Assembly (NCBI RefSeq): GCF_001194135.2
Contig: NC_068982.1
Span: 114,708,026 to 114,772,025 of the forward strand
Origin: Octopus bimaculoides
Lineage: Eukaryota
Length of the DNA stretch: 64,000 nt
Direction: 5' to 3'
Shown here in pieces: positions 47,236-64,000 of this stretch (position 1 is its first letter; every line of letters begins with the position of its first letter). A program made the position numbers and the translations under genes. The notes under the pieces were generated by a model. It searched no databases. It was given only the letters and a program-made list of their open reading frames with translations, and was not told where the DNA came from.

Positions 47236-48166
47236 TATTGTTGAGCAGCAGGTCAGCTTGATTGATCAGACCTATGATCAAAGGTTTCCATCCAGGACCA
47301 TCAGGTATGTTTTTTTAAGACAGTGTATCTAGAAATGCATTATCCAATGTGTCCTTCCTTGGAGAGACAATAGGAAGGTGTATGATTTGATGCCAAAACA
47401 GACAATTGGAGCCTGGTGCTACTCACCAGCTGGCCAGCTCCTGTCAAACCGTCCAACCCATGCCAGCATGGAAAATAGATTTTAAATGATAATGATGATA
47501 ATGATGTATAATGACCTGTAGAGATATATTTGTACTGAGAAATAATAAATCTTTAATTTTACAAATTCATAGTTATGCAACTTGTATTAAATTACTGTTT
47601 TGAATCTTAAGGATTAAACTAGGTGAGGGTGTTAATGAGTTTCTATAGACTTCACATAACAGGTCCTTTAAATTTGAATGTTGACAGGATTTTGCTTTCA
47701 ATTAAGAGGCTCTCACATAGAAACTTGACATAGAAACTTGACATAGAAACTCCATTGTTGGTTCAAAGTAAATATTAATCAGACTATTAACTTCATTTTT
47801 TCAGGTGGTACCACAATATTTTTGACATGCACACTTCTTTCAATTCATATTTCATCCACACTCTTTCACATAATTCAAAGTCTCTTATTGAAAGTAAATG
47901 TCAAAGCATTAAATATAATATTAACCAAAAACCCCAATGAAAATACTCAAGCATAAATTTAAAACCTACTATGACTGCAATGTGATGATTCCTCAACACA
48001 AAATATAAAGTGTGGCACCTGAAGATGATCAGAAAATATGCCAACCAACAGGTAAACAAATACTGAAAAAATTGTTATGAATAGTCTGATTATGAATCTT
48101 TAAAATGTAGAAATATAAATTAAATTTAAAAAATGACATTAAGAAACACAGAAATGTGTAACAAAT

Positions 48167-48172
48167 TTTATT
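48167..48172 (-). promoter_or_regulatory. candidate SELENOF polyadenylation signal
   Basis: Minus-strand AATAAA followed by a T/GT-rich tract (TTTCTGTGTTTCTT), about 400 nt after the stop and downstream of the SECIS. Confidence 0.55.
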
Positions 48173-48349
48173 AATAATCCATGTGACCAGAAATAAATAT
48201 AAGAAAATTACATATCATGAAATACTATTAAAAAAAGAAAATTCATGATAAAAATAAATGGAATATTATATTCTTATTTAGTACCCACAATGATGGATTT
48301 AAGAGAGAAAAGATATAAAAATAGGCAGCTCTGAAATTCAAGTAATTGC

Positions 48350-48416
48350 TTTCTCATTTTGTATCCAACCTTACAACCTTAAATTAAGTTTTTAGTAAGA
48401 TTTTCATAGAGAGAAA
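48350..48416 (-). promoter_or_regulatory. SECIS element (type II-like) in the SELENOF 3' UTR
   Basis: Minus strand TTTCTC-TCT-ATGA-A-AATCTTAC-T-AAAAA-CTTA-ATT-TAAG-GTT-GTAAGGTT-GGAT-ACAAAAT-GAGAAA. Helix I is TTTCTC/GAGAAA, the core is ATGAA/GGAT, helix II is AATCTTAC/GTAAGGTT, with apical A run and mini-stem. Confidence 0.75.
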
Positions 48417-48576
48417 TCATTTACTAAAATGCTAATATTTTACGACCAGACCAGCCAACTGTAACATTAAGTATATGTGGTAGATGGTAAACTTTGAGAT
48501 TACCAAACTAGTCAGCAATATTAGCTACTTTGAATAGCAGAGCTGGTGAATAGATGCTTTGTGTTTTTTTGCATTT

Positions 48577-48755
48577 TTACTTCATTAAACGTTCATGAAA
48601 GAAGGCCTCCACAGAATCAGTGTTCCACTTCTCAATTCCTAGGGTTTCGACTATTTCTCTGTTCTCATTTAACAAATGGATAGTCGGATCAGCACCACGT
48701 GTGTACTTAATTTTAAGACCTGGAAATTGTTGTGTACGAGCGCTTTTCACAAAAG
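48577..48755 (-). CDS. SELENOF: selenoprotein F (Sep15), last coding exon
   Basis: Acceptor TTTGTCATTTCAG, phase 1. Reads (A)FVKSARTQQFPGLKIKYTRGADPTIHLLNENREIVETLGIEKWNTDSVEAFFHERLMK*, matching vertebrate AFVRSDKPKLFRGLQIKYVRGSDPVLKLLDD...LSILKWNTDSVEEFLSEKL. Confidence 0.95.
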
Positions 48756-49557
48756 CTGAAATGACAAATGAAATGATTCAGTAATTTTGTTAAGAAAATT
48801 AAACCAGACTTCTGTAATTCATTAGTTCTTAAAGTAATTATAAGTTAATTCACACAGTTATTCATCCTCATAAAATATTGTAACATTGCTTTTTAAGAGA
48901 CTGAGTTACAAAATTATATAATAAATATATATATATATATATATATATANNNNNNNNNNNNNNNNNNNNNNNNNNNNNNNNNNNNNNNNNNNNNNNNNNN
49001 NNNNNNNNNNNNNNNNNNNNNNNNNNNNNNNNNNNNNNNNNNNNNNNNNNNNNNNNNNNNNNNNNNNNNNNNNNNNNNNNNNNNNNNNNNNNNNNNNNNN
49101 NNNNNNNNNNNNNNNNNNNNNNNNNNNNNNNNNNNNNNNNNNNNNNNNNNNNNNNNNNNNNNNNNNNNNNNNNNNNNNNNNNNNNNNNNNNNNNNNNNNN
49201 NNNNNNNNNNNNNATATATATATATATATACCTAATATGAAATCTACATAAAGATACCATTACTGTTCTTATAAATAAGTTTAATTAATCTATAAGCTTA
49301 AATATTTAACATCATCTTATAGAAGATTTTAACATAAACAACTTTATAGATTATTTAGATGATTTCTTATTTAAAGAGTCTGTAATTAAATATCTTCAAC
49401 ATGGATGGAGTAATACATTCCATTAATGGAAGTTTTTGGTGATAAAATCAAATAAACAGACTAAAATGTTAAGTGTAAACAGCCAGAGTAGCTAATGCAA
49501 CAACACTCTATAAAAAATTCCTCCAGAACAACAAGGAAATTCTTGAGTTTGACTTAC

Positions 49558-49621
49558 CTTGAACCTGTGGATACCTTCCTAATTTTCATCCGCATACAAT
49601 TAGTTCAGCATAGGGATACAT
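49558..49621 (-). CDS. SELENOF: selenoprotein F (Sep15), Sec-containing exon (64 nt)
   Basis: Acceptor TTTTGTTATATTTCAAAG, donor AAG|GTAAGT. Reads MYPYAELIVCG-TGA-KLGRYPQVQ, the CxU motif of Sep15 (human LYAGAILEVCGUKLGRFPQVQ). Splices in frame to 48755. Confidence 0.95.
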
Positions 49622-49876
49622 CTTTGAAATATAACAAAAACATAACAAAACTTTTAAGTAAAGATAATATCAAAAATATTTGATACAGGTTAAATTTATT
49701 TAATCAACAGCTATATACAGATTAAGTTCCAACAAAAATGGAGGCTTAAACATATCTAAGTGACATTTATGTTTTTTGATATCCATAATAAAAACCAAGC
49801 AAATATCAATGGATAACTTCTCTGCAACTAACAGAGTACTACATAAAAGTTGCTGTAACAGACTGAATAACATATT

Positions 49877-49931
<55 letters not shown>

Positions 49932-50906
49932 ATGCATCTCCATTACTACCATAGGCAGTAATGGAGATAAACACAGGTAAGCCTGATATAAATATATTTA
50001 CATGTAGCACAAAATAAATACAGAATAAGGTAAGGTAATATGTAATTTCATAACTCAACAGTTGTTTCAGGAAACCTAGATTTACATGATAATCATGATA
50101 ATCATAAATTGCAGATGAAATGCACAAAAAGTCATGGGTATGTAACCTGTAACTAGTCACATGAAGAAATTACAATAAGTCCAGTTCTCCTCATCAAGAG
50201 AAGATGTAACCCATGCCAGATGGAAAAGTGAACACAAATTGCTGCTGCTGCTGGTGGCCATCAATTTTGCATTGTATGCATGTATGTATAGACAGGCAGT
50301 CACATTCCTAGATATCACAGAATGAGTGGTATATTCTATAATCATCAATATCAAAGTTTTATATCCACTTTACCATCAGGCTCAAGTTGGGCAGTTTTAC
50401 TCAAGTAGTGTTTTAGAGTCAGATACCACTCTTGATGCAACCCTTTTCATCACTTCTTACAGTATATAGGAATGTGATATGTCTATTCTAAAACAAGCAT
50501 AACACACTGTAACTGAAAATTCTATAAAATTGAATTAATTGTTGATTATCTCAAAAAACTTATTGATTTGAGAAGCTACAGACAATGCTAGAGAACTCTA
50601 GCTCTGTATCATATATGTTTAATGCTGTCAGATACCAATACATGTCTGATGTTGAATACTTGTACACTTTGATGCTAAAAACTACTTTTAATGTTAGATA
50701 TTACATAACTATACATACATTTGATATTAAACATCTGAACACTTTGATGTTATTTAATAACTACCATTATCGTCATTGTTTCACATCTGTTTTCCATGCT
50801 GGCATGAGTTGGACTAACAATATTTGATGCTAAATACCTGTACACTGTATTTGAAGTTAGAAAAACCTTTACCCTTTCACGTTAAATACTAATATATATA
50901 CATATA

Positions 50907-52097
50907 CAGTGTGTCCCAAAAAATGTATACACACTTTATTCCTTTTCAGATTTACCCCATTTGAAATAATGATGGAAACTAAACTAAGCTTTGAACAAAG
51001 GAAATTTATCCAAAAGTGTTTCTGGAAGTTGAAAAACACAGTCCAAGTACAAAAATGGTTTAGGTGGGAATTTCAAACAGATCTGCCGAAGTAGCTTACC
51101 ACTAATTGAATTACAGATAGATTTGAAACAGATGGAACTATTTAGAATGTCCACAAGAAACATTCCAGAAGACCATGGATATTAATGAGCCTGACAAAGC
51201 AAGAAAGGGTACTAGAAACATACTGCCAGAGTTCAAGAAAATCTGTGTGGCAAGTGAGTTGTGAGATAGGAACTGTACCTTGAAATACAGTCATTGGAAA
51301 AGTGACATTCCAAGAATAATCTAAGATCTCAATGAAAATGGTCCAAATCAAAGACAGTTGTTTTGCAAGTTGTATTTGGCAAGATGTGTAGACGATGCAC
51401 ATTTTCCAACAAAGACTGTTTGGAGTGATGAGGCTACATACAAATTAAATGGCTTGATTAACTGCCACAGTTGTACCTATTGGGGACCCAAGGAACCACA
51501 TACTAAGGAGGAACATCATGTAAATTTACCAGTAGTTACATAATAGTGATGCTTATCATTAAAAGGATTAATTGGCCCATTCTTTTTGGTGGCACTGTGA
51601 CTGAATATCATGCCAAGTCTTCAAGAGGACTTAGAAGATGTGGAGTTTTATTTTGAATAAGACAGGATACACCAACACTACAATTGTAATGTAAGGGCTT
51701 ATCGTGATGAGGCTTTGCTAAACAGGTGGATCAGACAAAGCAATTCAGATGAATACCCGCCACAGTTGCCAGACCTCACATCACTAGACTTTTTTCTATG
51801 GGGATACTTAGATGATAAAATTTATTGTACAAAACTAGCAACACTCAATGAACTGAAGACAGCCACTGAATGAGAATGCACATAAATACCAAACAAAATG
51901 TTTCTTGATATTTGCAATTCCATTGTTTCATGTTACCAGCAGTGCCTGGACCAGAATGGACATCACTTTGAAAACAGGTGATCATAAAAAAAAAATTCTG
52001 TTTGTAGATTCTATTAAATTTTGAAACTGAACTCTATTTTAATAAGCACTGACTTTTATATCATTCTATGTGTATACATTTTTGAGGGGATACCCTG
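50907..52097 (+). mobile_element. defective IS630-Tc1-mariner element, DD41D (rosa-like)
   Basis: TA flanks (50905-06, 52098-99). TIRs CAGTGTGTCCCAAAAAATGTATACACA / CAGGGTATCCCCTCAAAAATGTATACACA. Motifs [12 protein letters not shown] and PDLTSLDFFLWGYL. 41 codons lie between the Asp at 51661 and the Asp at 51787. Stops and frameshifts elsewhere. Confidence 0.85.
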
Positions 52098-53239
52098 TAT
52101 ATATAATGATGATGATGATATTTGATGTTAAATACTTGTACACTTTTAAGTTATTAAATGGTATTTTTTTAATGTCAAATGTGAAATCATTATGTAACTA
52201 CAAATATTGATGTTATTAGATAAGTACACATGTTTGATGTTATGATGATCAGATCCCAAATGGAGTCTTTATCGATGGGAGAAGTGAATATCTAACAGAA
52301 GCAGTTGATAGTCAACTAAAATTTCAAAGATTGACTACATCCACCAGCAAAACCGCAATACAAAACAGTATATAAAATATAAGTAAAAAATATTTGTTCA
52401 TATACTGTATAGTCTCTAAGTTGAAATCCCATCAGACTTAGTTTTGTGTTTCACTCTACTAGAGATGATATGTAGCAGTAGCATAAAGAGGTTGATTCAA
52501 ATAACAATAAATACTTCATTCAACAATTCATCTTAACTTAAGGAAGAAATTAATATGTGTAAATTTTACTTTATCTTATATATTAATTACATGCAAAAGC
52601 AAAACATTTAATCATTATATGAAATCTTAGGGAACAGTGTACTATTTTGGGAATAATAGTTTGGCCACATTTGTCATGTTGGATTTTACAACTGATATTA
52701 TCATCATCACAATTTTATATGTGCTTTTTTATGCTGGCATGAATTTGGGGTTTTCCTGCGGCACAGTTTTACAGCTAGATGCACTTCTTGTTGCCCACCC
52801 TTACAATATGCATGGACACTGTGTACCTATTCTAAAACCACAGTAAGCTATTACTAAACAGAGTAATAAAAACTCAAATACAATAAGTCCTTTACAAAAG
52901 AATACATTAGTTTGCATCTATTAGTTCAGAAGATAATTCTAGGTCTAAACTAGGATGACCTACATTTCATTGATACAGATACAAACAAAAATGTGAACAG
53001 TTAGAATATCTTCTGCAGTGTGTCAGTCAGTACATCATCACATTAAACACCAAAATAGTTTCTGAATTTCCAGACTACAAGTTGTGATATCTCAAGCATC
53101 CTGGTATCTATTTTAACTAATGTTAGGTTAAACTTGGTAGCTTGTAAAACTTCCAGAATGGTTCATGTAAGAAAAAGTGAGTAAATATACAGTTAGAGTC
53201 TTTTCTTCAATTATTTAGGAATATTTCTCAAATTGAGAA

Positions 53240-53371
53240 TTTCCAAAAATTGCACCTAACCTGTACCCTCCGGGTACAGTGGTGCGCTCAATTATTAATT
53301 GCAGGTGTCAGCAGTCTTGCCCTCAGTAAACCCTCCTTGAGCAAGCTCCCAACCCCCTGACGAGGACGGTT
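53240..53371 (-). ncRNA. RNU4ATAC: U4atac minor-spliceosomal snRNA
   Basis: 5' AACCGTCCTCGTCAGGGGG (human AACCATCCTTTTCTTGGGG). K-turn stem-loop CTTGCTC-AAG-GA-GG-GTTTA-CT-GA-GGGCAAG. TGAGGGCAAGACTGCTGACACCTG (human TGAGGGCAGTACTGCTAACGCCTG). 3' stem-loop GCACC/CTGTACCC-GGA-GGGTACAG/GGTGC. Sm site AATTTTTGG (human GGTGCAATTTTTGGAAA). About 132 nt; the exact 3' end is uncertain. Confidence 0.9.
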
Positions 53372-54682
53372 AACTATATTTTGTCGTATTCTAATATATA
53401 CACTGAGCAAAATGTACATTTGTAGGTATTGACTAACGGAGTAGTCATCGCCATTAATGTACAGCGAAATATTGCGCTTAACAAATTATATCAACTTAAT
53501 TTAAAGAACATAATTAATCATTTTCGTAGATGTAACGTTTTGAATTAAACTGAAAAATAATTATTTAAGACTTTTTTCTGAAAGTTTACTTAAAAATATT
53601 ATTATTACTTCCCTTGACACGACACTTCCGCTTAATATGGGTTTCCTCCCTTAGCTTAGAATTTCTAAGAAATATTTATTCCACGTATTAATTTTCCACG
53701 TATTAATTTTCTCTCTCTCTCTCCGTCTCTCTCCACACACACATTCCTTCACACTTATTCTATCCCGCCCTTCTCGTTAACTGCCTGCTAAAATCATATA
53801 AATATTTATCGAGATGTTATATGAATGTACGTCACTCGGAAATTTGGCTGCGGCATTACGTGTTGTATATTCATACCCACCACCGCGATTCATTACATAT
53901 CTTAGTCAAATCACTTAATTCTACATGCCTTACTAATAAACTTAGTTGTTGTTGTTTAGTCCCATGTCAGCTCTGATCAAAAGGCATTAGAGCCGTGACA
54001 ACCACATTATGTTTTTTCACCTCCGTCGGACAAAATGTATTGCAATATTTGTTCTAGTTCAATACGTTCCGAGATCAACTTCATCCTTATGGAGGCCGGG
54101 GCAATAAAATAGAGTACCAGTTAAGTACTTGAGCTGAAGGTATTGATTAACCCGTCGTTTCAAAATTGATGGCCCGGTGCCTAAAATAGAAACATTGAAG
54201 ACGGTAGGGGGTGATCTAAGGGTTATCTGTCTGCTTTTTCTAGCAAATAGATAGAGCAGTTTTGAAATGACTTTTTTTATTTGATTTTTTATTTTTTTAT
54301 TTACTTATTTTGATTTTCCTGATTTTCATACAAATATAAATCATGGTTCTGGAAAAAAATTTAGTTAATGTTTACTTTAACTACCGGTCACCAAAACAAA
54401 CAAAAAAAACGAGTGTAATAGGTGTAAAAAAAAATGTGTATTAAACGAATGTGAAAACAAAAATTTGCGCCAACGAACGGGGGGGGGCGGAGAAAGGATT
54501 TTCGGAAAATTCGCAAGATCCGATTTTTCCCCTCATAACTTTTAGGAAAATGGATATCTTCTAGTGAAATTTTAAATAAATACCTTTCAAACGGCATAGA
54601 TTACGATTATAAAGAACGGGATGCTACAAATCAATATGACATATAATTTAAATTTTAATATATGTTCACGACATAATTTTCG

Positions 54683-54700
<18 letters not shown>
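53372..54700. promoter_or_regulatory. CpG-retaining region upstream of U4atac (candidate promoter)
   Basis: CpGs are frequent here but sparse in the flanks (by eye). CACTTCCG (ETS-like) at 53623-30, CCCGCCC at 53764-70, TACGTCA at 53828-34, and ATGGCG about 80 nt upstream of the snRNA start. Confidence 0.45.
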
Positions 54701-54723
<23 letters not shown>

Positions 54724-54827
54724 GAAGAAGAATGGAACGAACGAAACTGTTTATAATAAATATCATGCATGCTCTCATTGATATGCTAATTTTAGTACAT
54801 GCTTTTTGTGTGTTTGCACATATATAT

Positions 54828-55540
54828 NNNNNNNNNNNNNNNNNNNNNNNNNNNNNNNNNNNNNNNNNNNNNNNNNNNNNNNNNNNNNNNNNNNNNNNNN
54901 NNNNNNNNNNNNNNNNNNNNNNNNNNNNNNNNNNNNNNNNNNNNNNNNNNNNNNNNNNNNNNNNNNNNNNNNNNNNNNNNNNNNNNNNNNNNNNNNNNNN
55001 NNNNNNNNNNNNNNNNNNNNNNNNNNNNNNNNNNNNNNNNNNNNNNNNNNNNNNNNNNNNNNNNNNNNNNNNNNNNNNNNNNNNNNNNNNNNNNNNNNNN
55101 NNNNNNNNNNNNNNNNNNNNNNNNNNNNNNNNNNNNNNNNNNNNNNNNNNNNNNNNNNNNNNNNNNNNNNNNNNNNNNNNNNNNNNNNNNNNNNNNNNNN
55201 NNNNNNNNNNNNNNNNNNNNNNNNNNNNNNNNNNNNNNNNNNNNNNNNNNNNNNNNNNNNNNNNNNNNNNNNNNNNNNNNNNNNNNNNNNNNNNNNNNNN
55301 NNNNNNNNNNNNNNNNNNNNNNNNNNNNNNNNNNNNNNNNNNNNNNNNNNNNNNNNNNNNNNNNNNNNNNNNNNNNNNNNNNNNNNNNNNNNNNNNNNNN
55401 NNNNNNNNNNNNNNNNNNNNNNNNNNNNNNNNNNNNNNNNNNNNNNNNNNNNNNNNNNNNNNNNNNNNNNNNNNNNNNNNNNNNNNNNNNNNNNNNNNNN
55501 NNNNNNNNNNNNNNNNNNNNNNNNNNNNNNNNNNNNNNNN
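54828..55540. other. assembly gap (713 N)
   Basis: Direct reading. One possible hiding place for the missing 5' SELENOF exons. Confidence 0.99.
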
Positions 55541-55848
55541 GCCTGTGTTAGAATGGGGGCAGCTGATGAAGGAAAATGTTCTCTATGTGGCCTGTGTGTT
55601 TTCTGTACTCTGGTTATTATTATTTTTTTTGTCTACGTTTTGTTTGCAATGTCCTGTACCCAGATATGCACCTATATATACAGGTAGATGTAGGTATGCA
55701 CATACTTGTACGTATATATGCATATACTCATTTATATTTGTTTTATATATATATATAGACAGAGAGAGAGAGATTTGCATTATGAAAATGCTACCACTCC
55801 TTAAAAATCTGGCCTTATAATAAATGAAAATAAATTAATACTCTATAA

Positions 55849-56209
55849 CAGTGGTTCTCAACCATATCTTACCTGTAGAACCCTTTGATTACGGTTTTAC
55901 TCAGGTAGACCCCCTACAGCCAATTAATGTTTAAAAACTAATTTTATAGACACTTCTTTCAAAATTCCTATTTTGTTTACCACATGTTCACTTGTGCAGG
56001 TTTGCAATAGCACTCTCCAAGGGAACATGTTGAACTTTGTGGAGCGTTAAAAAAAGAAACCTAATTGTTTTGCTTTTTTTTATGGGGGGGGTGTAATAAA
56101 TACGTGTAAGGCAAAATTTTTTTCTTTGATCCCTAAAATACAACTGCAAACCCCCAAAAAATATTATATGAACCCTCAGGGCTTATATGGTGCCTTGTTA
56201 AGACCACAG
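55849..56209. mobile_element. hAT-type MITE
   Basis: Starts CAGTGGTTCTCAACC and ends ...GTTAAGACCACAG. 8-bp TSD CTCTATAA (55841-48) / CTCTATAC (56210-17). Confidence 0.75.
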
Positions 56210-56877
56210 CTCTATACAGTAATTACACTCTGAGTTCAAATCCTGCTAGGATCAACTTTTCCTTTCATTCTTCTAGGGTACAAATAAGCATAAATCAAGT
56301 ACTATGATCAATTCAATCAACTTTTCCCTTGCCTCTTAATTTGCAGCCTCAACATGATAAAGAGCTACAGAATAACTGCTTATAGTATCTGCAGAGAACT
56401 AGTTTAGTAATCAGACTAGTAAAAAATGACAGCTGCATCAAAAATTTAGCTAAGGGAGCACTCTAAATAGTTGCTCATCCTTGTAAAAATAACAGCCATT
56501 CTCTTCAAATCCCACCTTACTGTGTTAAAAAAAATGAAAGGGCATACTGCACAATATAGTTCTACATATAAAAAGACAGGAAGGTCATGGATGAAATGCC
56601 TTGGATAACAGATCTACTCAATGATCAGGAGTTGGTACAGAAAATTTTAACTCTAAACCCTCTATTTGTAATTAAGCTTATATTTCTTATTAACTGAGAG
56701 CATACAACATACATGGCCAATCTGAATCATCAGGGAATTTTTTAGCAGCATGATATATTTGAGTTGGGGTTTAAATGCTGCATAGCTTGTCACTAAATTT
56801 TTCTGTAATATTTATTGAAGTTACAAACAATTACATGGAAAAATGCAAGCATGAAAAGTCATATTCTTAAGATTATA

Positions 56878-57298
56878 AACATGGAAAAGGACAGGACAAG
56901 TTATTACACCTGTAAAAGTATAGGACAAGCTATTACTTCTAGTAAAGTAAAGATTAAGAAACTTTTTACTTAAAATATCGCAGCAAAGAATGCCAGTTCT
57001 AATTTATCACTCTTTACAGCTCTCATCATTAAAATTTATTGTACAAAACTGTTCAGCTAATTTCTAAGTTTGTCTAATTAGTCACTTTTTTCTGTATTTA
57101 AGGTAGTAAATTAACCAAATTCTACTTGAATAAGTATAGTGTTATTTGTAAACTATAATAAAATAAATTTTAATATTCAAATTTTAATTTTAGCTGCAAT
57201 ATTTTAAGTAAAAGTTTCTTATTCTTTACTTTACTTGAAGTAATAGCTTGTCCTATACTTTTACAGGTGTAATAACTTGACCTGTACTTTTCCAGGTT
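56878..57298. mobile_element. TA-flanked MITE with about 107-bp inverted arms
   Basis: AACATGGAAAAGGACAGGACAAGTTATTACACCTGTAAAAGTATAGGACAAGCTATTACTTC... (56878-56984) is the reverse complement of 57193-57298. TA at 56876-77 and 57299-300. Confidence 0.75.
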
Positions 57299-59800
57299 TA
57301 CATGGCTTGCACAGCTCTCACTAACCATTCATCTATCCCTAGTTTCCTCATTGACCACCAGATAAGGGATTGGGGGACCCTGTCAAAGGCTTTTTCCATA
57401 TCAACGAAAGCCAGATACAGAGGTTTATCCTTGGCTAGGTATTTCTCCTGCAGTTGTCTTACCAGAAATATAGCATCAGTGGTGCTTTTCCCTGGCACGA
57501 ACCCAAACTGCATCTCATCTAAACTGATTCGTTCCCTAATTAGTTGAGCTATGACCCTCTCCGTGACTTTCATTACCTGATCCAACAACTTGATACCTCT
57601 GTAATTATTTGTATCTAAAGCGTCACCTTTACCTTTGTAGCAGTTGACAATGGTGCTGCTACACCAGTCATTGGGTATGACTCCTTCATGTATCACCTGG
57701 TTAACTATACGGGTGACTAGGCTATAGCCAATAGACAGATATTTTGAGCATCTCTGCAGTGATTCCTGATGGGCCGGAGGCTTTCTCTGTCTTCATACTC
57801 TTGATTGCTTTATCTACCAAGGTACTGTCAATTCGGATAGCTGGTCCCTCTGTTGGGTCGACATTCGGCAGACTCTTTCTCCCATTCATTCTCTTTATTG
57901 AGCAACCTTTCATAGTAATGTCTCCAAACCTCTCTCTCTCTCTTTGCAGCCTTGTTTAGTGCAAGTGAACCATCATCCATGCAGACACATTTCTCTCCAA
58001 CATCACGATTCCCTCTCACACACTGTCTTGCAACACAAAATACTCAAGTCTTTGGTCCTCACAGCACAGAACATTGGCAAATTTTTTCTTATCTGCTTCC
58101 CCTCTAGCTGAATAAACCTGTCTCCTAGCTTCCCTTCTGGCAGTCTGATACAATTCCCTGCTACCACCGTTCTTCCAATCCTTCCAAGCCTGTTTCTTTT
58201 GTCAAATAGCCCTATCAACAACAATGTTCCACCACCACATTATTTTGGGTCGAGAGGGGACTTTGCATCATCCACAGAGCTGCTCAGTGGCCCTCAGCAG
58301 GTTGTCCTGTAGAAACATCTAATTTTCTTCCACATCGTGTGAAGTTATATCCCCTTCTATTTCATCAAAGGCTTCGAGTAATACATCTCTAAATCTCTGT
58401 CCATTCGCAGGATCTTTAAGCTTCCAGACCCTTCTCCTCCATGCTGGTCCTCTTCTGGGCATCCATTTAGCCCTGATCCTGACATTGCTAACTACCAGTC
58501 TATGTTGTGGGATACATTTTTCGCCTGGGAAGGTTTTGGCATTTATAAGTAGCCGTTTTCCCCTTTTTCTGGTGAGGATGTAGTCAATTTGGCTAAGTGT
58601 GTCTGCCAGAACAGTAGGTGACTAGGTGACTGGCAGGTTTCCTGAAGTTAGTATTGCAAACCATAAGATCATTTGCATCGCAGAACTCCAGCAGCCTGGT
58701 AGCCTCCATGTACACCATGGAAGCCCCCTGTATGTTATCCAACATGTCCAATGAAGTCACCAGCCACAAAGAGGAGGTCCCTGTCATTCGTCAACGAGGT
58801 AGTCTGCAAGAGGGTGTCATAAAATCGGTCCTTCTGTCCATCAGGTAGCCCCGGCTGAGGGGAACAGGCCGAGATAATGTTTGCTAACCCATGATGAAGC
58901 ACTAATCTAATCTTAAGTACTCTGTCACATACTCTGACTACCTCGATTACCTTATCAACTCATTTCTCAGCATGAAGTATACGCACGTCCCTGACTCCGT
59001 CAGTGTTCTTTGCCCAGAAAATCTTGTACCTGTGTTTTTTGCCTGTGAGGAACCTAGCAGAACCTCCTCTCCACCTTACTTCTAGGATGCAGCACAAATC
59101 GACACATCTCCGTTCAAGCATCTCAAAAATCTCACCAGACCTACTTTTCAGTGTGCCGACGTTGAGAGTACCAACCCTGAGGGTGTAGGAGGTATGGGCC
59201 TATGAGACCCTGGGACAGGGGACAGCAGCATCATGTACCTGAATAGAAAGCTCACATTTGGCAGAATTCATAAACAAACAATAGCCTTCATTTCAACCTG
59301 CATACACTACACCATCATATCTATGCACTATATGATCACTACCTTACATAGGAGATAAACCCTAAGTAGGGGTGGGGATGGCATAAAGGCTTTAGAAGTG
59401 TGCATGGGAGACAACCAAAGAATGACACAGGATAGGAACTTCCAGTACAGGTGGAGGGGGTCAGAGGGTCGGTGGGCGGGCGTACTATGAACTAACAAAT
59501 TTAGACGGGAGCATCTTCTGGATACGTATTCTTTCGGCGGAGGTATTAAAAATCGAGTAGGGGAATCCAAGTGCATGCACTAGTTTATATAGGATAGGGG
59601 TGGGGGAAGTCTTGGCGAAGCAAGTGGTAATCGAAAGAGAGACAGATAGACAGACAGAGTGAGGCCGAGAGAGAGAGAGACAGACAGAGTGAGGCCGAGA
59701 GACAGTGAGGCAAAGAGAGAGAGGGGGTACCAGAGTTAGGGTGGTCAGAACACGAGGGAGAAAAATATTCTTTTGGGATTTGGGTAGCATAATTTAAAGA
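57299..59800 (-). mobile_element. RTE-clade LINE, 5' part (5' region, APE endonuclease, start of RT), defective
   Basis: TLRVGTLNVGTL (EN start, ~59170); ...CNTNFRKPASHLVTY; NYRGIKLLDQVMKVTERV...FGFVPGKSTTDAIF...AFVDMEKAFDRVP. Contains frameshifts. The 5' boundary is approximate. Confidence 0.85.
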
Positions 59801-60559
59801 AACAGCAAATGTCAATAATAGTAAAATAGAATTGAAAAAAAAGTTTTCAGTCAGCCAATCTATAACAAAATTTGAGAAATAAGTGACTGTGTGATAAACT
59901 TGAATGAATGAATATGTGGTGGTTAAGGATATGATGAACTAAGGTTATCTTCAGGCAACAACAAGGATGACGAAACTATATTTACATATTTACATGGTAA
60001 TGAAATAGAAGAGTAGATGAACAAGGTTGAAAAGACAAAATTTCTTATCTGAGCATCTTCTGAGATTCGTATCCTTTCACATATATATATATGTATATAC
60101 ATACATATATATATAATATACATACATATATATATATATATATANNNNNNNNNNNNNNNNNNNNNNNNNNNNNNNNNNNNNNNNNNNNNNNNNNNNNNNN
60201 NNNNNNNNNNNNNNNNNNNNNNNNNNNNNNNNNNNNNNNNNNNNGGAAATGTATAACTGCTGTCATTCACAGAAAAACTATTGTTTTACTGTGAAAAAAG
60301 TGCTGTTGAAGTGTTAAGTGAAATTTATCGATCAAGGATCAAATCCACAGTATGCCTGCATGAAACCACAACAAATACATTGTGGAATAAAAAATTTATC
60401 TACTATCATGGAAAAAGTGTAACTGTAAAAATGCAGAATTATTGGAGTAATAGGCATTCAAAAAAGTATGTATGTATAGAAATGTATAAATGAAATCTTT
60501 AAGGTTTAAGATTCAAATTAAGGAAGTGCAATAATAATAATACAGTTCTATATTTAAGA

Positions 60560-60689: not shown

Positions 60690-63300
60690 CCAATCTGAGC
60701 TGGCAATATTTCTACAGCTGGATGTTCTTCCTAACGCCAATCACTAAGAGTGTAGTGGGTGCTTTTTACGTGTCAGTGGCACAGAAGCCAGTCAAGGGGT
60801 ACTGGCATTGGCCACATTCGGATGGTGCTTTTTGCATACCACTGGCACAGGGGCCAATCAGGCGGTCTTGACATCAATCCTGTTCAGATAATGGTATTTA
60901 TGTGCCACCGGCACGGGAGCCAGTCAGGGGATACTGGCCACAGCTATGATATTGGTTTTATTTGACTCAACAGGTCTTCTCAAGCGTATCATATCACCCG
61001 ACACATCGTGTACACTTAACTGGGCCAGATAAACATGGCTGCAATCTCACTTTAGTTGCCGAGTCTTCTCAAGCTCAGCATATCTCCAAAGTTCTCGGTC
61101 TCCGGTCATTTCCTCTGTGAGGCCCAATGTTCAAAGGTCATGCTTCAACACCTCATCCCATGTCTTCCTGGGTCTACCTCTTCGATAGGTTCCTTCCACA
61201 GTTAGGGAGTGGCACTTCCTCACACAGCTGTCCTCATCCGTGCGTAACACACGACCATACCAGCGCAGTTGTCTCTTGCACACCACATTTGATGCTTCTT
61301 GTGCCCAACTTTTCTCTCAGGGCACTTACACTCTGTCGTGTATGCACACTGACATTGCACATCCAGCAGAGCATATTAGCTTCATTTCTTTCAAGCCCAT
61401 GCATGTCTTCAGCAGTCATGGCCCATTTTTTACTGACATGTAGCATGACTGTTTGCATGCAGGCATCATACAGTCTACCTTTCATCCTGAGCAAGAGGCC
61501 CTTAGTTGCCAGCAGACATAAAAGCTCCCTGAACTTTGCCCAGACTATTCTTATTCTAGCCGCTACACTCTCAGAGCAACCACCCCCACTACAAACTTGG
61601 TCGCCTAGGTCGTGGAAGCTATTAATTACTTCCAGTTTCTCCACCAAGCATATAATGGAATCTGTTTTCTGTACAACTTCAGTGTTTATTGCCCCTGTGC
61701 ATCTGTTACACACAAAAACTATCTTCCCATTTAACCTTCCTTTGATATTGCTGCACCTTTTATTTGTCCATAGCTTACACCGAGTACACCGTATGGAGTT
61801 TCTACCCACGCCTTTTCTACAGATCGAACAGAGCCATCTACCTGAAGGGGTTTGTGATTTGACAGCCTTCCTACTTACTAAGACTTTGGTTTTTGCTAGG
61901 TTAACCCTAAGGCCCTTCACTTCTAGACCTTGCTTCCACACCCTAAACTTCGTCTCTAGTTCTGGCAATGACTCAGCTATTAGAGTAAGGTCATCAGTAT
62001 AGAGAAGCTCCCAGGGGCAGCCTGTCTTGAATTCCTGTTATTGCCTAGAAGACTATGATGAATAAGAGTGGGGATGACTATACTCATTACCAACCCTCAC
62101 CTTACTGACAACATCCCTCTATCTCTAGTTTCTGCATTGACCACCAGATAAGGGATCAGGGGACTCTGTCAAAGGCTTTCTCCAAGTCAACAAAAGCCAA
62201 ATACAGAGGTTTATCTTTTGCTAATTGTCTTACCAGAAATACAGCATCAGTGGTGCTTCTGCTTTGCACAAAACTAAACTGCATCTCATCTAGGCTAAGT
62301 CTCTCCCTAATTAGTTGGGCTATGACTCTGTAACTGTCATCACTTGATCCAATAATTTGATACCCCTGTAGTTATTGCTATCTAAAGCATCGCGTTTACC
62401 CTCATAGCAGTTGATTATGGTGCTGCTACACCAGTCATTGGGTATCACTCCTTCATGAACTACCTGATTTACAACATGACCATAACCCACACCACCCAAT
62501 ATTTTAAGCATCTCAGCGGCGACTTCTGATGAGCCAGGTGCTTTCTCTGTCTTCATATCCTTAATTGCTTTATCTACCAGGGTACTGTCGATTTGGATAG
62601 CTGGTCCCTCAACTGGGTCAACATTTGGCAGACTCTCCTCCTCCCATTCATTCTCTATATTCAGCAGTCTTTCATATAATGGCATCTCCAAGCCTCTTTC
62701 TTTGCAGAATCATTAAACGCAAGGGCACCATCATCCATGCAGACACACTTCTCTCCTATAACATCACAGTTTTCTCTCAAACACTGTCTTGCAATCCGAA
62801 ATACTTCAGTTCTTTAGTCATCACATCGCTAGACATTGGCAAACTTCTTTTCTGCTTCTCCCTTAGCTATGTATACCTGTCGCCCAGCCTCCCTTCTGGC
62901 TACCTGGTACAGTTCCCTGCTACCCCCACTCTTCCAGGCTTTCCAGGTGCCTAGTCCCCTCTTCATTTCTGGTACCAATTTCATGGCCCCCATGTACACC
63001 ATGGGAGATATCAGGTTGCTGTCCAACATGCCCATTAAAATCTCCAGCTACAAAGATAAGATCATTGTCACTCGTCTTTGAGGTAGCCTGCAGAAGAATA
63101 TCATAAAAGTGATCCTTCTGTTCATTTGGTAGGCCCGCTTGTTGGGTGTAGGCAGAGATAATTGTAGTAATATCATTCTGCAAGACCAGCCTGAGTTTAA
63201 GTACTCTATTGCACACCCTCACTACCTCTATGACCTTATCCACCCATTTCTCTGCAAGAAGTATGCCCACACCCCCTATTCCATCACTATTACCTTCCCT
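60690..63300 (-). mobile_element. RTE-clade LINE, internally deleted (EN part, RT pieces, PHD-like finger, C-terminus, 3' UTR)
   Basis: GVGILLAEKWVDKV...AGDFNGHVG; NYRGIKLLDQV; LLYTDDLTL; KGLRVNLAKTKV...CSIC...CTRC...CNRC; ARIRIVWAKFRELL. The 3' UTR equals family C. Confidence 0.85.
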
Positions 63301-63611
63301 GTACATATATATATATATATATATATATTTATTACTTATATATATGCATCTTAAAACAATTCATTGAGAGCTGTACCAAGTCAGCTATCATAAAATCTCC
63401 ATATCAACCAATAAGAGGGAAATTTTAGGTAAAACACTATAAAATAAATTACTCAATGAACACTGAGAAATTCCTGAGGTAGATCCAGCGACAAATGTGT
63501 AAATACTGTGGATGACATCAGGTAGTCATAGGCAGTGAACGTGTTTCATCAGCTAACTACTAGGAACATACTCAATACTTAAATAATTATTTATCTATTT
63601 TACATATATAT

Positions 63612-64000
63612 GGGTTCGTGCCAGGTAAAAGCACCACTGATGCCATATTTCTGGTGAGACAGCTGCAGGAGAAATATCTAGCCACGGATAAACCTCTGTA
63701 CCTGGCCTTCGTTGACATGGAGAAAGCCTTTGACAGGGTCCCCCGATCCCTTATCTGGTGGTCAATGAGGAAACTTGGGATAGAAGAATGGTTAGTGAGA
63801 GCTGTGCGAGCCATGTACAGAGATGCTGTCAGTAAGGTGAAGGTTGGAAATGAGTACCGTAATGAATTCCGGGTAGAGGTAGGGGTCCACCAAGGTTCCG
63901 TCCTCAGCCCCCTCCTATTTATCATAGTCCTCCAGGCGATCACAGAGGAATTCAAGACAGGTTGCCCCTGGGAGCTCCTCTATGCTGATGACCTTGCACT
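63612..64000 (+). mobile_element. RTE-clade LINE, RT domain, uninterrupted to the window edge (5'-truncated)
   Basis: GFVPGKSTTDAIFLVRQLQEKY...AFVDMEKAFDRVP...GVHQGSVLSPLLF...ELLYADDLA with no stops. Opposite orientation to the two neighbouring RTE copies. Confidence 0.9.

What the first reader, a model, noticed from the sequence alone, without database searches (positions are those of the whole stretch)
48577..49621. Hidden selenoprotein: SELENOF with Sec recoding, absent from the ORF track
Seen: two exons with canonical splice sites give 80 aa, YPYAELIVCG-U-KLGRYPQVQAFVKS...KWNTDSVEAFFHERLMK, with TGA at 49588-49586. Established: Sep15/SELENOF is an ER thioredoxin-like CxU protein that partners UGGT in glycoprotein folding control; some invertebrate orthologues have Cys instead of Sec. 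Here Sec is retained. Standard pipelines would tend to truncate or mis-splice this gene at the TGA.
Basis: partly seen in the sequence, partly recalled or inferred. Interest (0 to 1): 0.8.

Follow-up and report, generated by a model that had tools for sequence, protein, structure and literature searches.

The report
Octopus selenoprotein F gene, 3' half
The window holds the last two coding exons and the 3' UTR of an ordinary, expressed selenoprotein F (Sep15) gene, probably from an octopus, whose in-frame TGA encodes selenocysteine; the call is correct, but it is a known gene family behaving as expected.

Summary
On the minus strand, exon 49621..49558 (64 nt) and exon 48755..48577 (179 nt) join in frame to give 80 codons, with TGA at 49588-49586 in a C-G-U motif.

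- **Family:** the translation matches the Pfam Sep15/SelM domain (E 1e-27). It matches fly Sep15 (PDB 2a4h, E 3e-23) far better than SelM (E 8e-6).
- **Expression:** RNA contigs from seven runs (four source-organism datasets, three closely related species) join 48755|49558 exactly and keep the TGA. DNA contigs keep it too.
- **Gap:** the N gap lies inside the intron, between (TA)n runs, and does not affect the frame.
- **SECIS:** a canonical AUGA..AAA..GA element sits at 48415..48351, 161 nt after the stop. It is the only conserved island in the 3' UTR, and changes in relatives preserve the pairing.
- **Relatives:** all 12 related contigs examined that span the site carry TGA at the same position.

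Two corrections. The ATG at 49621 is not the start codon. The mRNA continues 5' into coding sequence that is not in the window, so about half the protein (signal peptide and Cys-rich domain) is missing here.

Verdict: a real and correctly read SELENOF gene, and a known kind of gene. Its value is for annotation. All seven named database models from other invertebrates skip this exon.

The parts
49558..49621 (-). Sec-containing coding exon (64 nt): M-YPYAELIVCG-U-KLGRYPQVQ plus the first base of an Ala codon. Phase-0 acceptor AG at 49623-49622; donor GTAAGT at 49557-49552.
   Evidence: RNA contigs cover 49558-49625 with no differences in 7 runs. The organism's DNA contig covers 49214-49700 with no differences.
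49586..49588 (-). TGA = selenocysteine codon of the C-G-U redox motif. It lies 28 nt before the last exon-exon junction.
   Evidence: It is unchanged in RNA and DNA contigs. TGA is at the homologous position in L001-L005, L006, L007/8, L010/11, L012-L015.
48756..49557 (-). Last intron (nominal 802 nt, GT..AG). It contains the assembly gap 48950-49213, flanked by (TA)n. The true length is unknown.
   Evidence: The joint 48755|49558 is seen in X4, X7, X8, X13 and in X33, X37, X38.
48577..48755 (-). Last coding exon (179 nt including the TAA stop at 48579-48577): the rest of the thioredoxin-like Sep15 domain, ...AFVKSARTQQFPGL...KWNTDSVEAFFHERLMK*.
   Evidence: Both substitutions in organism H (48709, 48724) fall at third codon positions and are synonymous (with codon positions counted by hand from the sequence).
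48155..48576 (-). 3' UTR (about 420 nt). The mRNA contigs end at 48155-48187.
   Evidence: pieces table.
48351..48415 (-). SECIS element. Helix 1 is UUUCUC/GAGAAA; the internal loop is 3/7 nt; the core is AUGA (48407-48404) opposite GGAU; helix 2 is 9 bp; there is an AAA(AA) motif and an apical mini-stem (form 2).
   Evidence: Rfam SECIS_1 scores 32.6 bits, E 0.0022. The fold z-score is -2.6. The architecture scan is. The region is homologous to L007 864-928 (43.1 bits, above the gathering score). Changes in the related species are G.U wobble or fall in loops.
48167..48172 (-). AATAAA polyadenylation signal, 12 nt before the longest contigs end.

Best explanation
This is the 3' half of the orthologue of selenoprotein F (SELENOF/Sep15). 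The animal is most likely an octopus, Octopus bimaculoides or a close relative.

The two exons encode the thioredoxin-like redox domain, whose active site is Cys-Gly-Sec. The UGA in the 64-nt exon is read as selenocysteine. The form-2 SECIS element in the 3' UTR lies about 370 nt downstream of the UGA in the mRNA. It would recruit SBP2, eEFSec and Sec-tRNA to the ribosome. Translation then continues for 68 more codons to the TAA.

- **Shown here:** the exon structure, the splice junction, the TGA in both DNA and mRNA, expression, the presence and conservation of the SECIS, and conservation of the coding sequence beyond the TGA.
- **Inferred from established knowledge of the family:** actual Sec insertion, ER residence, and partnership with UGGT in glycoprotein folding control.

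The signal peptide and the Cys-rich UGGT-binding domain are encoded by exons outside the window. They lie either beyond position 64000 or inside an assembly gap.
For: - **Domain:** PF08806 scores E 1.2e-27.
- **Sep15 rather than SelM:** fly Sep15 (2a4h) scores E 2.8e-23 against SelM (2a2p) at E 8.3e-6, and the motif is CxU rather than CxxU.
- **Spliced mRNA:** four RNA datasets of the same organism hold the spliced mRNA with joint 48755|49558, no base differences, and word depths up to 737.
- **Related species:** three closely related species (organisms H, I, J) show the same joint and an identical Sec exon.
- **Selection:** in organism H the coding part of exon B differs only at two synonymous sites. 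The 3' UTR carries about 11 substitutions and 6 indels.
- **DNA:** genomic contigs of the organism (X25) reproduce 49214-49700 exactly, so the TGA is not an assembly error.
- **TGA in relatives:** it is at the same position in every related contig that spans the site. Full-length relatives (L012, L014) are about 151-155 aa, with a signal peptide and a Cys-rich domain.
- **Upstream match:** the 30 letters of mRNA 5' of exon A translate in frame to QMDQEGEKAL(K), which matches ...CCQEDVNTDQALK of L010.
- **SECIS:** it scores 32.6 bits, E 0.0022, on the correct strand in the 3' UTR. It is the only part of the 3' UTR that aligns with L007, where it scores 43.1 bits. The window, L007 and L014 share the same architecture, with fully compensatory helix 1 in L014. 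Three of 9 helix-2 pairs show double changes. All four substitutions in the related species give G.U pairs or fall in loops.
Against: - The SECIS scores 2.4 bits below Rfam's gathering score.
- No protein-level evidence of Sec insertion exists here (no ribosome profiling, mass spectrometry or 75Se labelling).
- The N-terminal half was not found in the window. Full SELENOF architecture is therefore seen only through 30 nt of transcript and through relatives.
- All RNA evidence comes from assembled contigs. These hide minority variants such as A-to-I editing.
- The species assignment rests on transposon-protein similarity, not on an exact match.
Confidence: 0.93

Rival explanations
1. The TGA is a true stop. 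On this reading the locus is a pseudogene, or it yields only a truncated product ending at ...VCG, and the downstream frame is a relic.
For: TGA is a stop by default, and no protein-level data were available. The UGA lies only 28 nt before the last junction. A terminated mRNA could therefore escape EJC-dependent decay and still look well expressed.
Against: - The downstream 68 codons score as a Sep15 domain.
- Those codons show only synonymous changes in organism H, while the UTR diverges.
- TGA is conserved at this exact codon in 12 related contigs.
- A conserved SECIS follows the stop.
Confidence: 0.02
2. The Sec codon is partly rewritten in the mRNA. In coleoid cephalopods, which edit A-to-I heavily, the last A of UGA could be edited to give UGG (Trp) in some tissues. 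A Trp isoform would then be made alongside the Sec form.
For: Nothing direct. Assembled contigs drop minority variants, so cannot exclude it. Extensive recoding by editing in cephalopods is established knowledge of my own and was not tested here.
Against: Every RNA contig, in 7 runs from 4 species, carries TGA. The conserved SECIS argues that Sec decoding is the selected outcome.
Confidence: 0.04
3. The gene is a SELENOM-type paralogue (the same Pfam domain without the UGGT-binding domain) rather than SELENOF.
For: PF08806 covers both families. The N-terminal domain is not in the window.
Against: - The motif is CxU, not CxxU.
- phmmer E is 2.8e-23 to Sep15 against 8.3e-6 to SelM.
- The upstream mRNA letters align with the end of the Cys-rich domain of full-length relatives.
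Confidence: 0.01

Closest known systems
Vertebrate SELENOF (Sep15, the 15-kDa selenoprotein)
   Same: It has the Sep15/SelM thioredoxin-like domain and the C-G-U active site. The single in-frame UGA sits in a short internal exon. One SECIS lies in the 3' UTR, and the C-terminal ...KWNTDSVE.F motif is present.
   Different: This is an orthologue from a mollusc. Only the last two coding exons lie in the window. The 3' side of the SECIS core reads GGAU here, against the commoner UGAU, which the relative L007 has.
Drosophila Sep15 (PDB 2a4h)
   Same: It is the best solved-structure match (E 2.8e-23, residues 2-79 aligned), with the same domain.
   Different: The fly protein has C-T-C, with Cys in place of Sec, and so needs no SECIS. 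The window keeps Sec.
SELENOM (PDB 2a2p)
   Same: Same Pfam family and thioredoxin-like fold.
   Different: SELENOM has CxxU and no Cys-rich N-terminal domain. The match is much weaker (E 8.3e-6).
Mollusc and other invertebrate SELENOF transcripts found here (L001-L015)
   Same: They carry TGA at the identical codon. They share 70-80% amino-acid identity over the domain. L007, L014 and L010 have a SECIS of the same architecture.
   Different: The middle residue of CxU varies: G, N, Q or A. Some relatives (L001, L003-5, L012, L013, L015) have no Rfam-detectable SECIS. L003-5 show only a UUGA-core candidate.

Membership tests
SELENOF (Sep15) | Sep15/SelM thioredoxin-like redox domain (PF08806) | tested here: met
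   E 1.2e-27, 96.2 bits against a cut-off of 26; residues 7-78 cover profile positions 4-74 of 75.
SELENOF (Sep15) | CxU active-site motif (SELENOM has CxxU), and closer to Sep15 than to SelM | tested here: met
   TGC-GGA-TGA at 49594-49586. 2a4h Sep15 scores E 2.8e-23 against 2a2p SelM at E 8.3e-6.
SELENOF (Sep15) | In-frame UGA present in the genome and the mRNA, and conserved in orthologues | tested here: met
   DNA contigs and RNA contigs of 7 runs carry it. TGA is at the same codon in 12 related contigs.
SELENOF (Sep15) | N-terminal signal peptide and Cys-rich UGGT-binding domain | tested here: inconclusive
   Not encoded anywhere in the sequenced part of the window. Only 30 nt of the upstream exon are visible, as a loose end of the mRNA contigs: QMDQEGEKAL(K), which aligns with the end of the Cys-rich domain of L010 and L012.
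SELENOF (Sep15) | Selenocysteine actually inserted; ER residence; binding to UGGT | not testable with these tools
   Needs 75Se labelling, mass spectrometry or ribosome profiling, plus cell biology.
Eukaryotic SECIS element (Rfam RF00031) | AUGA / GA non-Watson-Crick core, helix 2 of about 9-11 bp, unpaired AA(A) motif, helix 1 below an internal loop, located in the 3' UTR | tested here: met
   AUGA is at 48407-48404, opposite GGAU. Helix 2 is 9 bp; AAAAA follows; helix 1 is 6 bp with a 3/7 loop; the core AUGA starts at UTR position 170 and the element begins 161 nt after the stop.
Eukaryotic SECIS element (Rfam RF00031) | Scores as a family member with the covariance model | tested here: inconclusive
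   32.6 bits, E 0.0022, which is 2.4 bits under the gathering score of 35. The homologous element of L007 scores 43.1 bits and that of L014 scores 32.2.
Eukaryotic SECIS element (Rfam RF00031) | Structure conserved through compensatory change | tested here: met
   Helix 1 reads tttctc/gagaaa in the window and cacatt/aatgtg in L014. Three of 9 helix-2 pairs show double changes. Substitutions in the related species at 48399 and 48395 give G.U, and those at 48409 and 48357 lie in loops. There are only 4-6 sequences, so the statistics are weak.

The most novel reading that the evidence does not exclude
The most novel reading not excluded concerns the neighbourhood, not the selenoprotein itself.

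A U4atac minor-spliceosome snRNA gene (53370..53239, same strand) sits inside the intron that precedes the Sec exon. In a relative (L007/L008), a U4atac copy lies 115 nt 5' of the two already joined SELENOF exons, with no acceptor site. This suggests a conserved host-gene relationship that produces U4atac-SELENOF chimeric read-through transcripts or a retrocopy made from one.

A second unexcluded reading is partial A-to-I editing of the Sec UGA to UGG in cephalopod tissue.
Probability: 0.15. Interest if true: 0.4.

Novelty: already known. Interest (0 to 1): 0.15.

Why it matters
The value is mainly for annotation. The window gives a clean, transcript-supported model of the Sec exon, the last exon and the SECIS of SELENOF in a cephalopod-type genome.

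No octopus SELENOF entry turned up in a search of 5.8 billion proteins. No paper in the searched library mentions SELENOF together with cephalopods.

The case also shows the known weakness of annotation pipelines. All 7 named invertebrate models skip or garble this exon. That fits the published figures of only 5-11% of vertebrate selenoprotein genes being well annotated in GenBank and Ensembl (PMC12822975).

It does not change what is known about SELENOF or about Sec decoding.

Tried and rejected
- **Search for the 5' exons in the window.** The 30 mRNA letters 5' of exon A were searched with up to 2 mismatches and as 10-12-mers. RNA contigs were laid on 50400-56300. tblastn was run with eight N-terminal domains of relatives. 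Nothing was found. The exons lie beyond 64000 or in the gaps at 54828-55540 or 60145-60244.
- **First SECIS scan.** My first home-made scan had the helix register off by one and found nothing, not even the window's own element. It was corrected.
- **Rfam SECIS_1 on relatives.** It found nothing in L001, L003, L004, L006 or in L012, L013, L015. The covariance model is not sensitive enough for them. Only a UUGA-core candidate was seen in L003-5.
- **NCBIfam.** No match, as expected, since it is a prokaryote-oriented library.
- **Bridging the N gap with genomic contigs.** Only about 20-letter (TA)n overlaps were found, which are not informative.
- **Follow-up of L007.** Whether L007 is RNA or DNA therefore stays open.
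- **Termite origin.** Two 'termite gut metagenome' runs hold the mRNA. I rejected a termite source because the transposon proteins point to Octopus and the nearest SELENOF relatives are molluscan.
- **Literature.** No paper on cephalopod SELENOF was found.

Full report
**1. What is in the sequence**

Read on the minus strand, 49621..49558 is a 64-nt exon. It is preceded by ...ttatatttcaaAG and followed by GTAAGT. Exon 48755..48577 is 179 nt, preceded by ...tgtcatttCAG, and ends in TAA.

Joined, the two exons give 243 nt, or 80 codons plus stop: MYPYAELIVCG*KLGRYPQVQAFVKSARTQQFPGLKIKYTRGADPTIHLLNENREIVETLGIEKWNTDSVEAFFHERLMK*. The only internal stop is the TGA at 49588-49586, directly after TGC-GGA. 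All three frames of the 64-nt exon contain a stop. An ordinary gene finder therefore cannot use this exon.

**2. The assembly gap**

The N run at 48950-49213 lies wholly inside the intron between the two exons, and (TA)n flanks it on both sides.

RNA contigs from four datasets of the source organism (X4, X7, X8, X13) join 48755 directly to 49558. The skipped ends are CT..AC on the plus strand, which is GT..AG on the minus strand. There are no base differences over 48155-48755 or 49558-49625. Three further runs from closely related species (organisms H, I, J) show the same joint.

The two sides of the gap therefore belong to one transcription unit, and the frame across the splice is as read. 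Only the intron length (nominally 802 nt) is uncertain. Genomic contigs do not bridge the (TA)n in an informative way.

**3. Is the TGA real?**

Genomic contigs assembled independently from a DNA run of the same organism (X25) reproduce 49214-49700 and 48100-48703 with no differences. All RNA contigs carry the TGA. A base error is excluded as far as contigs can show. Minority variants would not be seen.

**4. Identity**

With Sec replaced by Cys, the 80 residues match Pfam PF08806 (Sep15/SelM redox domain) at E 1.2e-27. Among solved structures, Drosophila Sep15 (2a4h) matches at E 2.8e-23 over residues 2-79. SelM (2a2p) matches only at E 8.3e-6 and needs a gap to accommodate its CxxU. The motif here is CxU.

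A search of 5.8 billion proteins gave 75 relatives, and I fetched the contigs encoding ten of them. Every contig that spans the site has TGA at the homologous codon: L001-L005, L006, L007/8, L010/11 and L012-L015. Four database proteins show W at that position. Their DNA reads TGA, so W comes from gene calling with a TGA=Trp code.

Full-length relatives (L012 at 155 aa, L014 at 151 aa) have a signal peptide and the Cys-rich domain (...C..C......C..CC...) ahead of the part seen here.

**5. The gene is incomplete in the window**

The mRNA contigs match the genome up to 49625. They then continue with letters that are not in the window: minus-sense CCAAATGGACCAAGAGGGAGAGAAAGCATT followed by AAAG|ATG. 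The four letters AAAG happen to match both the intron end and the upstream exon.

In frame, this reads ...QMDQEGEKALK-MYPYAEL. It aligns with ...CCQEDVNTDQALK-VYPFAEL of L010. The intron position (phase 0, just before this codon) is the same in the unspliced relative L009.

The ATG at 49621 is therefore an internal Met, not the start. Neither the 30-mer nor any N-terminal domain of eight relatives is found in the window, and no piece of the mRNA contig lies on 50400-56300. The 5' exons must lie beyond 64000 or in the gaps at 54828-55540 or 60145-60244.

**6. SECIS**

Rfam SECIS_1 matches 48415..48351 on the minus strand, with the element starting 161 nt after the stop, at 32.6 bits and E 0.0022 for a 10-kb search of all families. 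This is 2.4 bits below the gathering score.

The element has all the canonical parts:
- Helix 1 is UUUCUC/GAGAAA.
- The internal loop is 3/7 nt.
- The core is AUGA opposite GGAU.
- Helix 2 is 9 bp.
- An AAAAA motif is followed by a small apical stem (form 2).
- The fold z-score is -2.6.

Three further lines lift it above a borderline score.

(a) Between the window and the relative L007, the only alignable part of the 3' UTR is exactly this element (window 48415-48326 against L007 864-956, 77% identity). In L007 it scores 43.1 bits, above the gathering score. L014 scores 32.2 and L010 scores 22.9.

(b) The window, L007 and L014 share the same architecture. Helix 1 is completely different in sequence in L014 (cacatt/aatgtg) but still pairs. 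Three of nine helix-2 pairs show double changes.

(c) In the related species, the 3' UTR carries many substitutions and indels. The four changes inside the SECIS are C>U giving G.U in helix 2 (48399, 48395) or lie in the internal loops (48409, 48357). The changes are, and I mapped the positions by hand onto the alignment.

In the mRNA, the SECIS starts about 370 nt after the UGA. An AATAAA at 48172-48167 precedes the contig ends at 48155.

**7. Selection beyond the UGA**

In organism H, the coding part of exon B differs from the window at two sites only. These are 48724 (TTT>TTC) and 48709 (ATT>ATC), and both are synonymous. The roughly 220 nt of aligned 3' UTR shows about 11 substitutions and 6 indels. 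The Sec exon is identical in all four species. This is the pattern expected if translation continues through the UGA.

**8. Mechanism**

Shown here: the exon structure, splicing, expression, the UGA in DNA and RNA, and conservation of the SECIS and of the downstream coding sequence.

Inferred from established knowledge of eukaryotic Sec decoding and of Sep15:
- The SECIS recruits SBP2, eEFSec and Sec-tRNA, so the UGA is decoded as Sec.
- The product is an ER-resident thioredoxin-like oxidoreductase with a CGU centre.
- Its missing N-terminal Cys-rich domain would bind UGGT.

The UGA lies 28 nt before the last exon junction. By the vertebrate 50-55-nt rule, that would spare the mRNA from EJC-dependent decay even when Sec insertion fails. 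This is an inference and was not tested.

**9. Source organism**

A reverse-transcriptase/PHD ORF in the window (61234-61968, minus strand) has its best named relatives among Octopus bimaculoides proteins, at 68-78% identity. The nearest named SELENOF relatives are molluscan.

Two runs labelled 'termite gut metagenome' contain the mRNA at 100%. I take this as cross-sample contamination.

**10. Comparison with what is known, and novelty**

SELENOF/Sep15 is an old, widespread eukaryotic selenoprotein. It is present as a selenoprotein even in green algae and Dictyostelium (PMC2375036). Its Sec form is evidently the rule in the molluscan and other invertebrate transcripts examined here. The finding is therefore a correct identification of a known gene with its known recoding mechanism.

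The claim that pipelines mishandle it is also established. Only 11% (Ensembl) and 5% (GenBank) of vertebrate selenoprotein genes are well annotated, and many transcripts skip the Sec exon (PMC12822975). It is reproduced here. All seven named database models of the orthologue (Sinanodonta, Tegillarca, Pinctada, Candidula, Batillaria, Trinorchestia, Petrolisthes) lack or garble exactly this exon.

No octopus SELENOF protein appeared in the protein search. No paper in the library pairs SELENOF with cephalopods. The particular orthologue may be unannotated, but the kind is known.

**11. Side observation**

A full-length U4atac snRNA gene (83.3 bits, gathering score 53) lies at 53370..53239 on the same strand. 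It is 3.6 kb 5' of the Sec exon, and so inside the preceding intron.

In the relative L007/L008, a U4atac (70.7 bits) lies 115 nt 5' of the Sec exon. There the Sec exon is already joined to the last exon, and no AG acceptor or open frame precedes it. This points to conserved linkage. It also points either to a chimeric read-through transcript or to a retrocopy made from one.

**12. Verdict**

The biology is ordinary and the interest is low, apart from annotation value.

Noticed in passing
window 53239-53370 (-); L007 251-379; L008 about 219-347: A full-length U4atac minor-spliceosome snRNA gene (83.3 bits, gathering score 53) lies on the same strand as SELENOF, 3.6 kb 5' of the Sec exon, and so inside the preceding intron. 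In the relative L007/L008, a U4atac (70.7 bits) lies only 115 nt 5' of the Sec exon. There the Sec exon is already spliced to the last exon, with no AG acceptor and an in-frame TAA just upstream. This points to conserved linkage plus a chimeric read-through transcript or a retrocopy.
   Followed up: partly
runs X7 and X39, laid on window 48183-49625: Two metatranscriptome runs labelled 'termite gut metagenome' contain the spliced SELENOF mRNA of this organism at 100% identity. This is most likely cross-sample contamination, not a termite gene.
   Followed up: partly
P0017, P0039, P0042, P0045, P0064, P0067, P0070 (alignment A3): All seven named database models of SELENOF from bivalves, gastropods and crustaceans lack or garble the segment homologous to the 64-nt Sec exon. 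This is systematic exon skipping by annotation pipelines.
   Followed up: yes
P0001, P0002, P0003, P0025; loci L001-L006: These database proteins show Trp at the Sec position, but the DNA reads TGA. The gene caller used a TGA=Trp code on eukaryotic transcripts. The middle residue of CxU varies among relatives: G, N, Q or A.
   Followed up: yes
L003 UTR +353..+395; the same element in L004 and L005 at +481: These gastropod-like SELENOF transcripts have the in-frame TGA but no Rfam SECIS hit. The only candidate is a strong hairpin with a non-canonical UUGA core opposite GGAG, and with AAA in the apical region.
   Followed up: partly
L006 2973-3296 (22.8-kb ENA contig): In this relative the Sec exon, the last exon and part of the preceding coding segment are contiguous, with no introns, in a long genomic contig. 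The TGA is intact (C-A-U). This reflects intron loss or a retrogene.
   Followed up: no
window 57298-57696, 61234-61968, 62320-62691, 62920-63306 (all -): There are fragments of non-LTR retrotransposon ORFs (endonuclease, reverse-transcriptase and PHD-finger parts). Their best named relatives are Octopus bimaculoides proteins at 68-78% identity, and these were used to infer the source organism.
   Followed up: partly
window gaps at 1360, 6270, 10485, 16722, 25304, 26638, 35986, 37860, 48950, 54828, 60145: The window has eleven N gaps. The gap at 48950-49213 is flanked by (TA)n, and several others (for example those at 1360, 6270, 16722, 25304 and 60145) adjoin simple-repeat sequence such as TA-rich runs. 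This fits a short-read assembly breaking at simple repeats. A (CA)n run lies at 49878-49937, in the intron 5' of the Sec exon.
   Followed up: no
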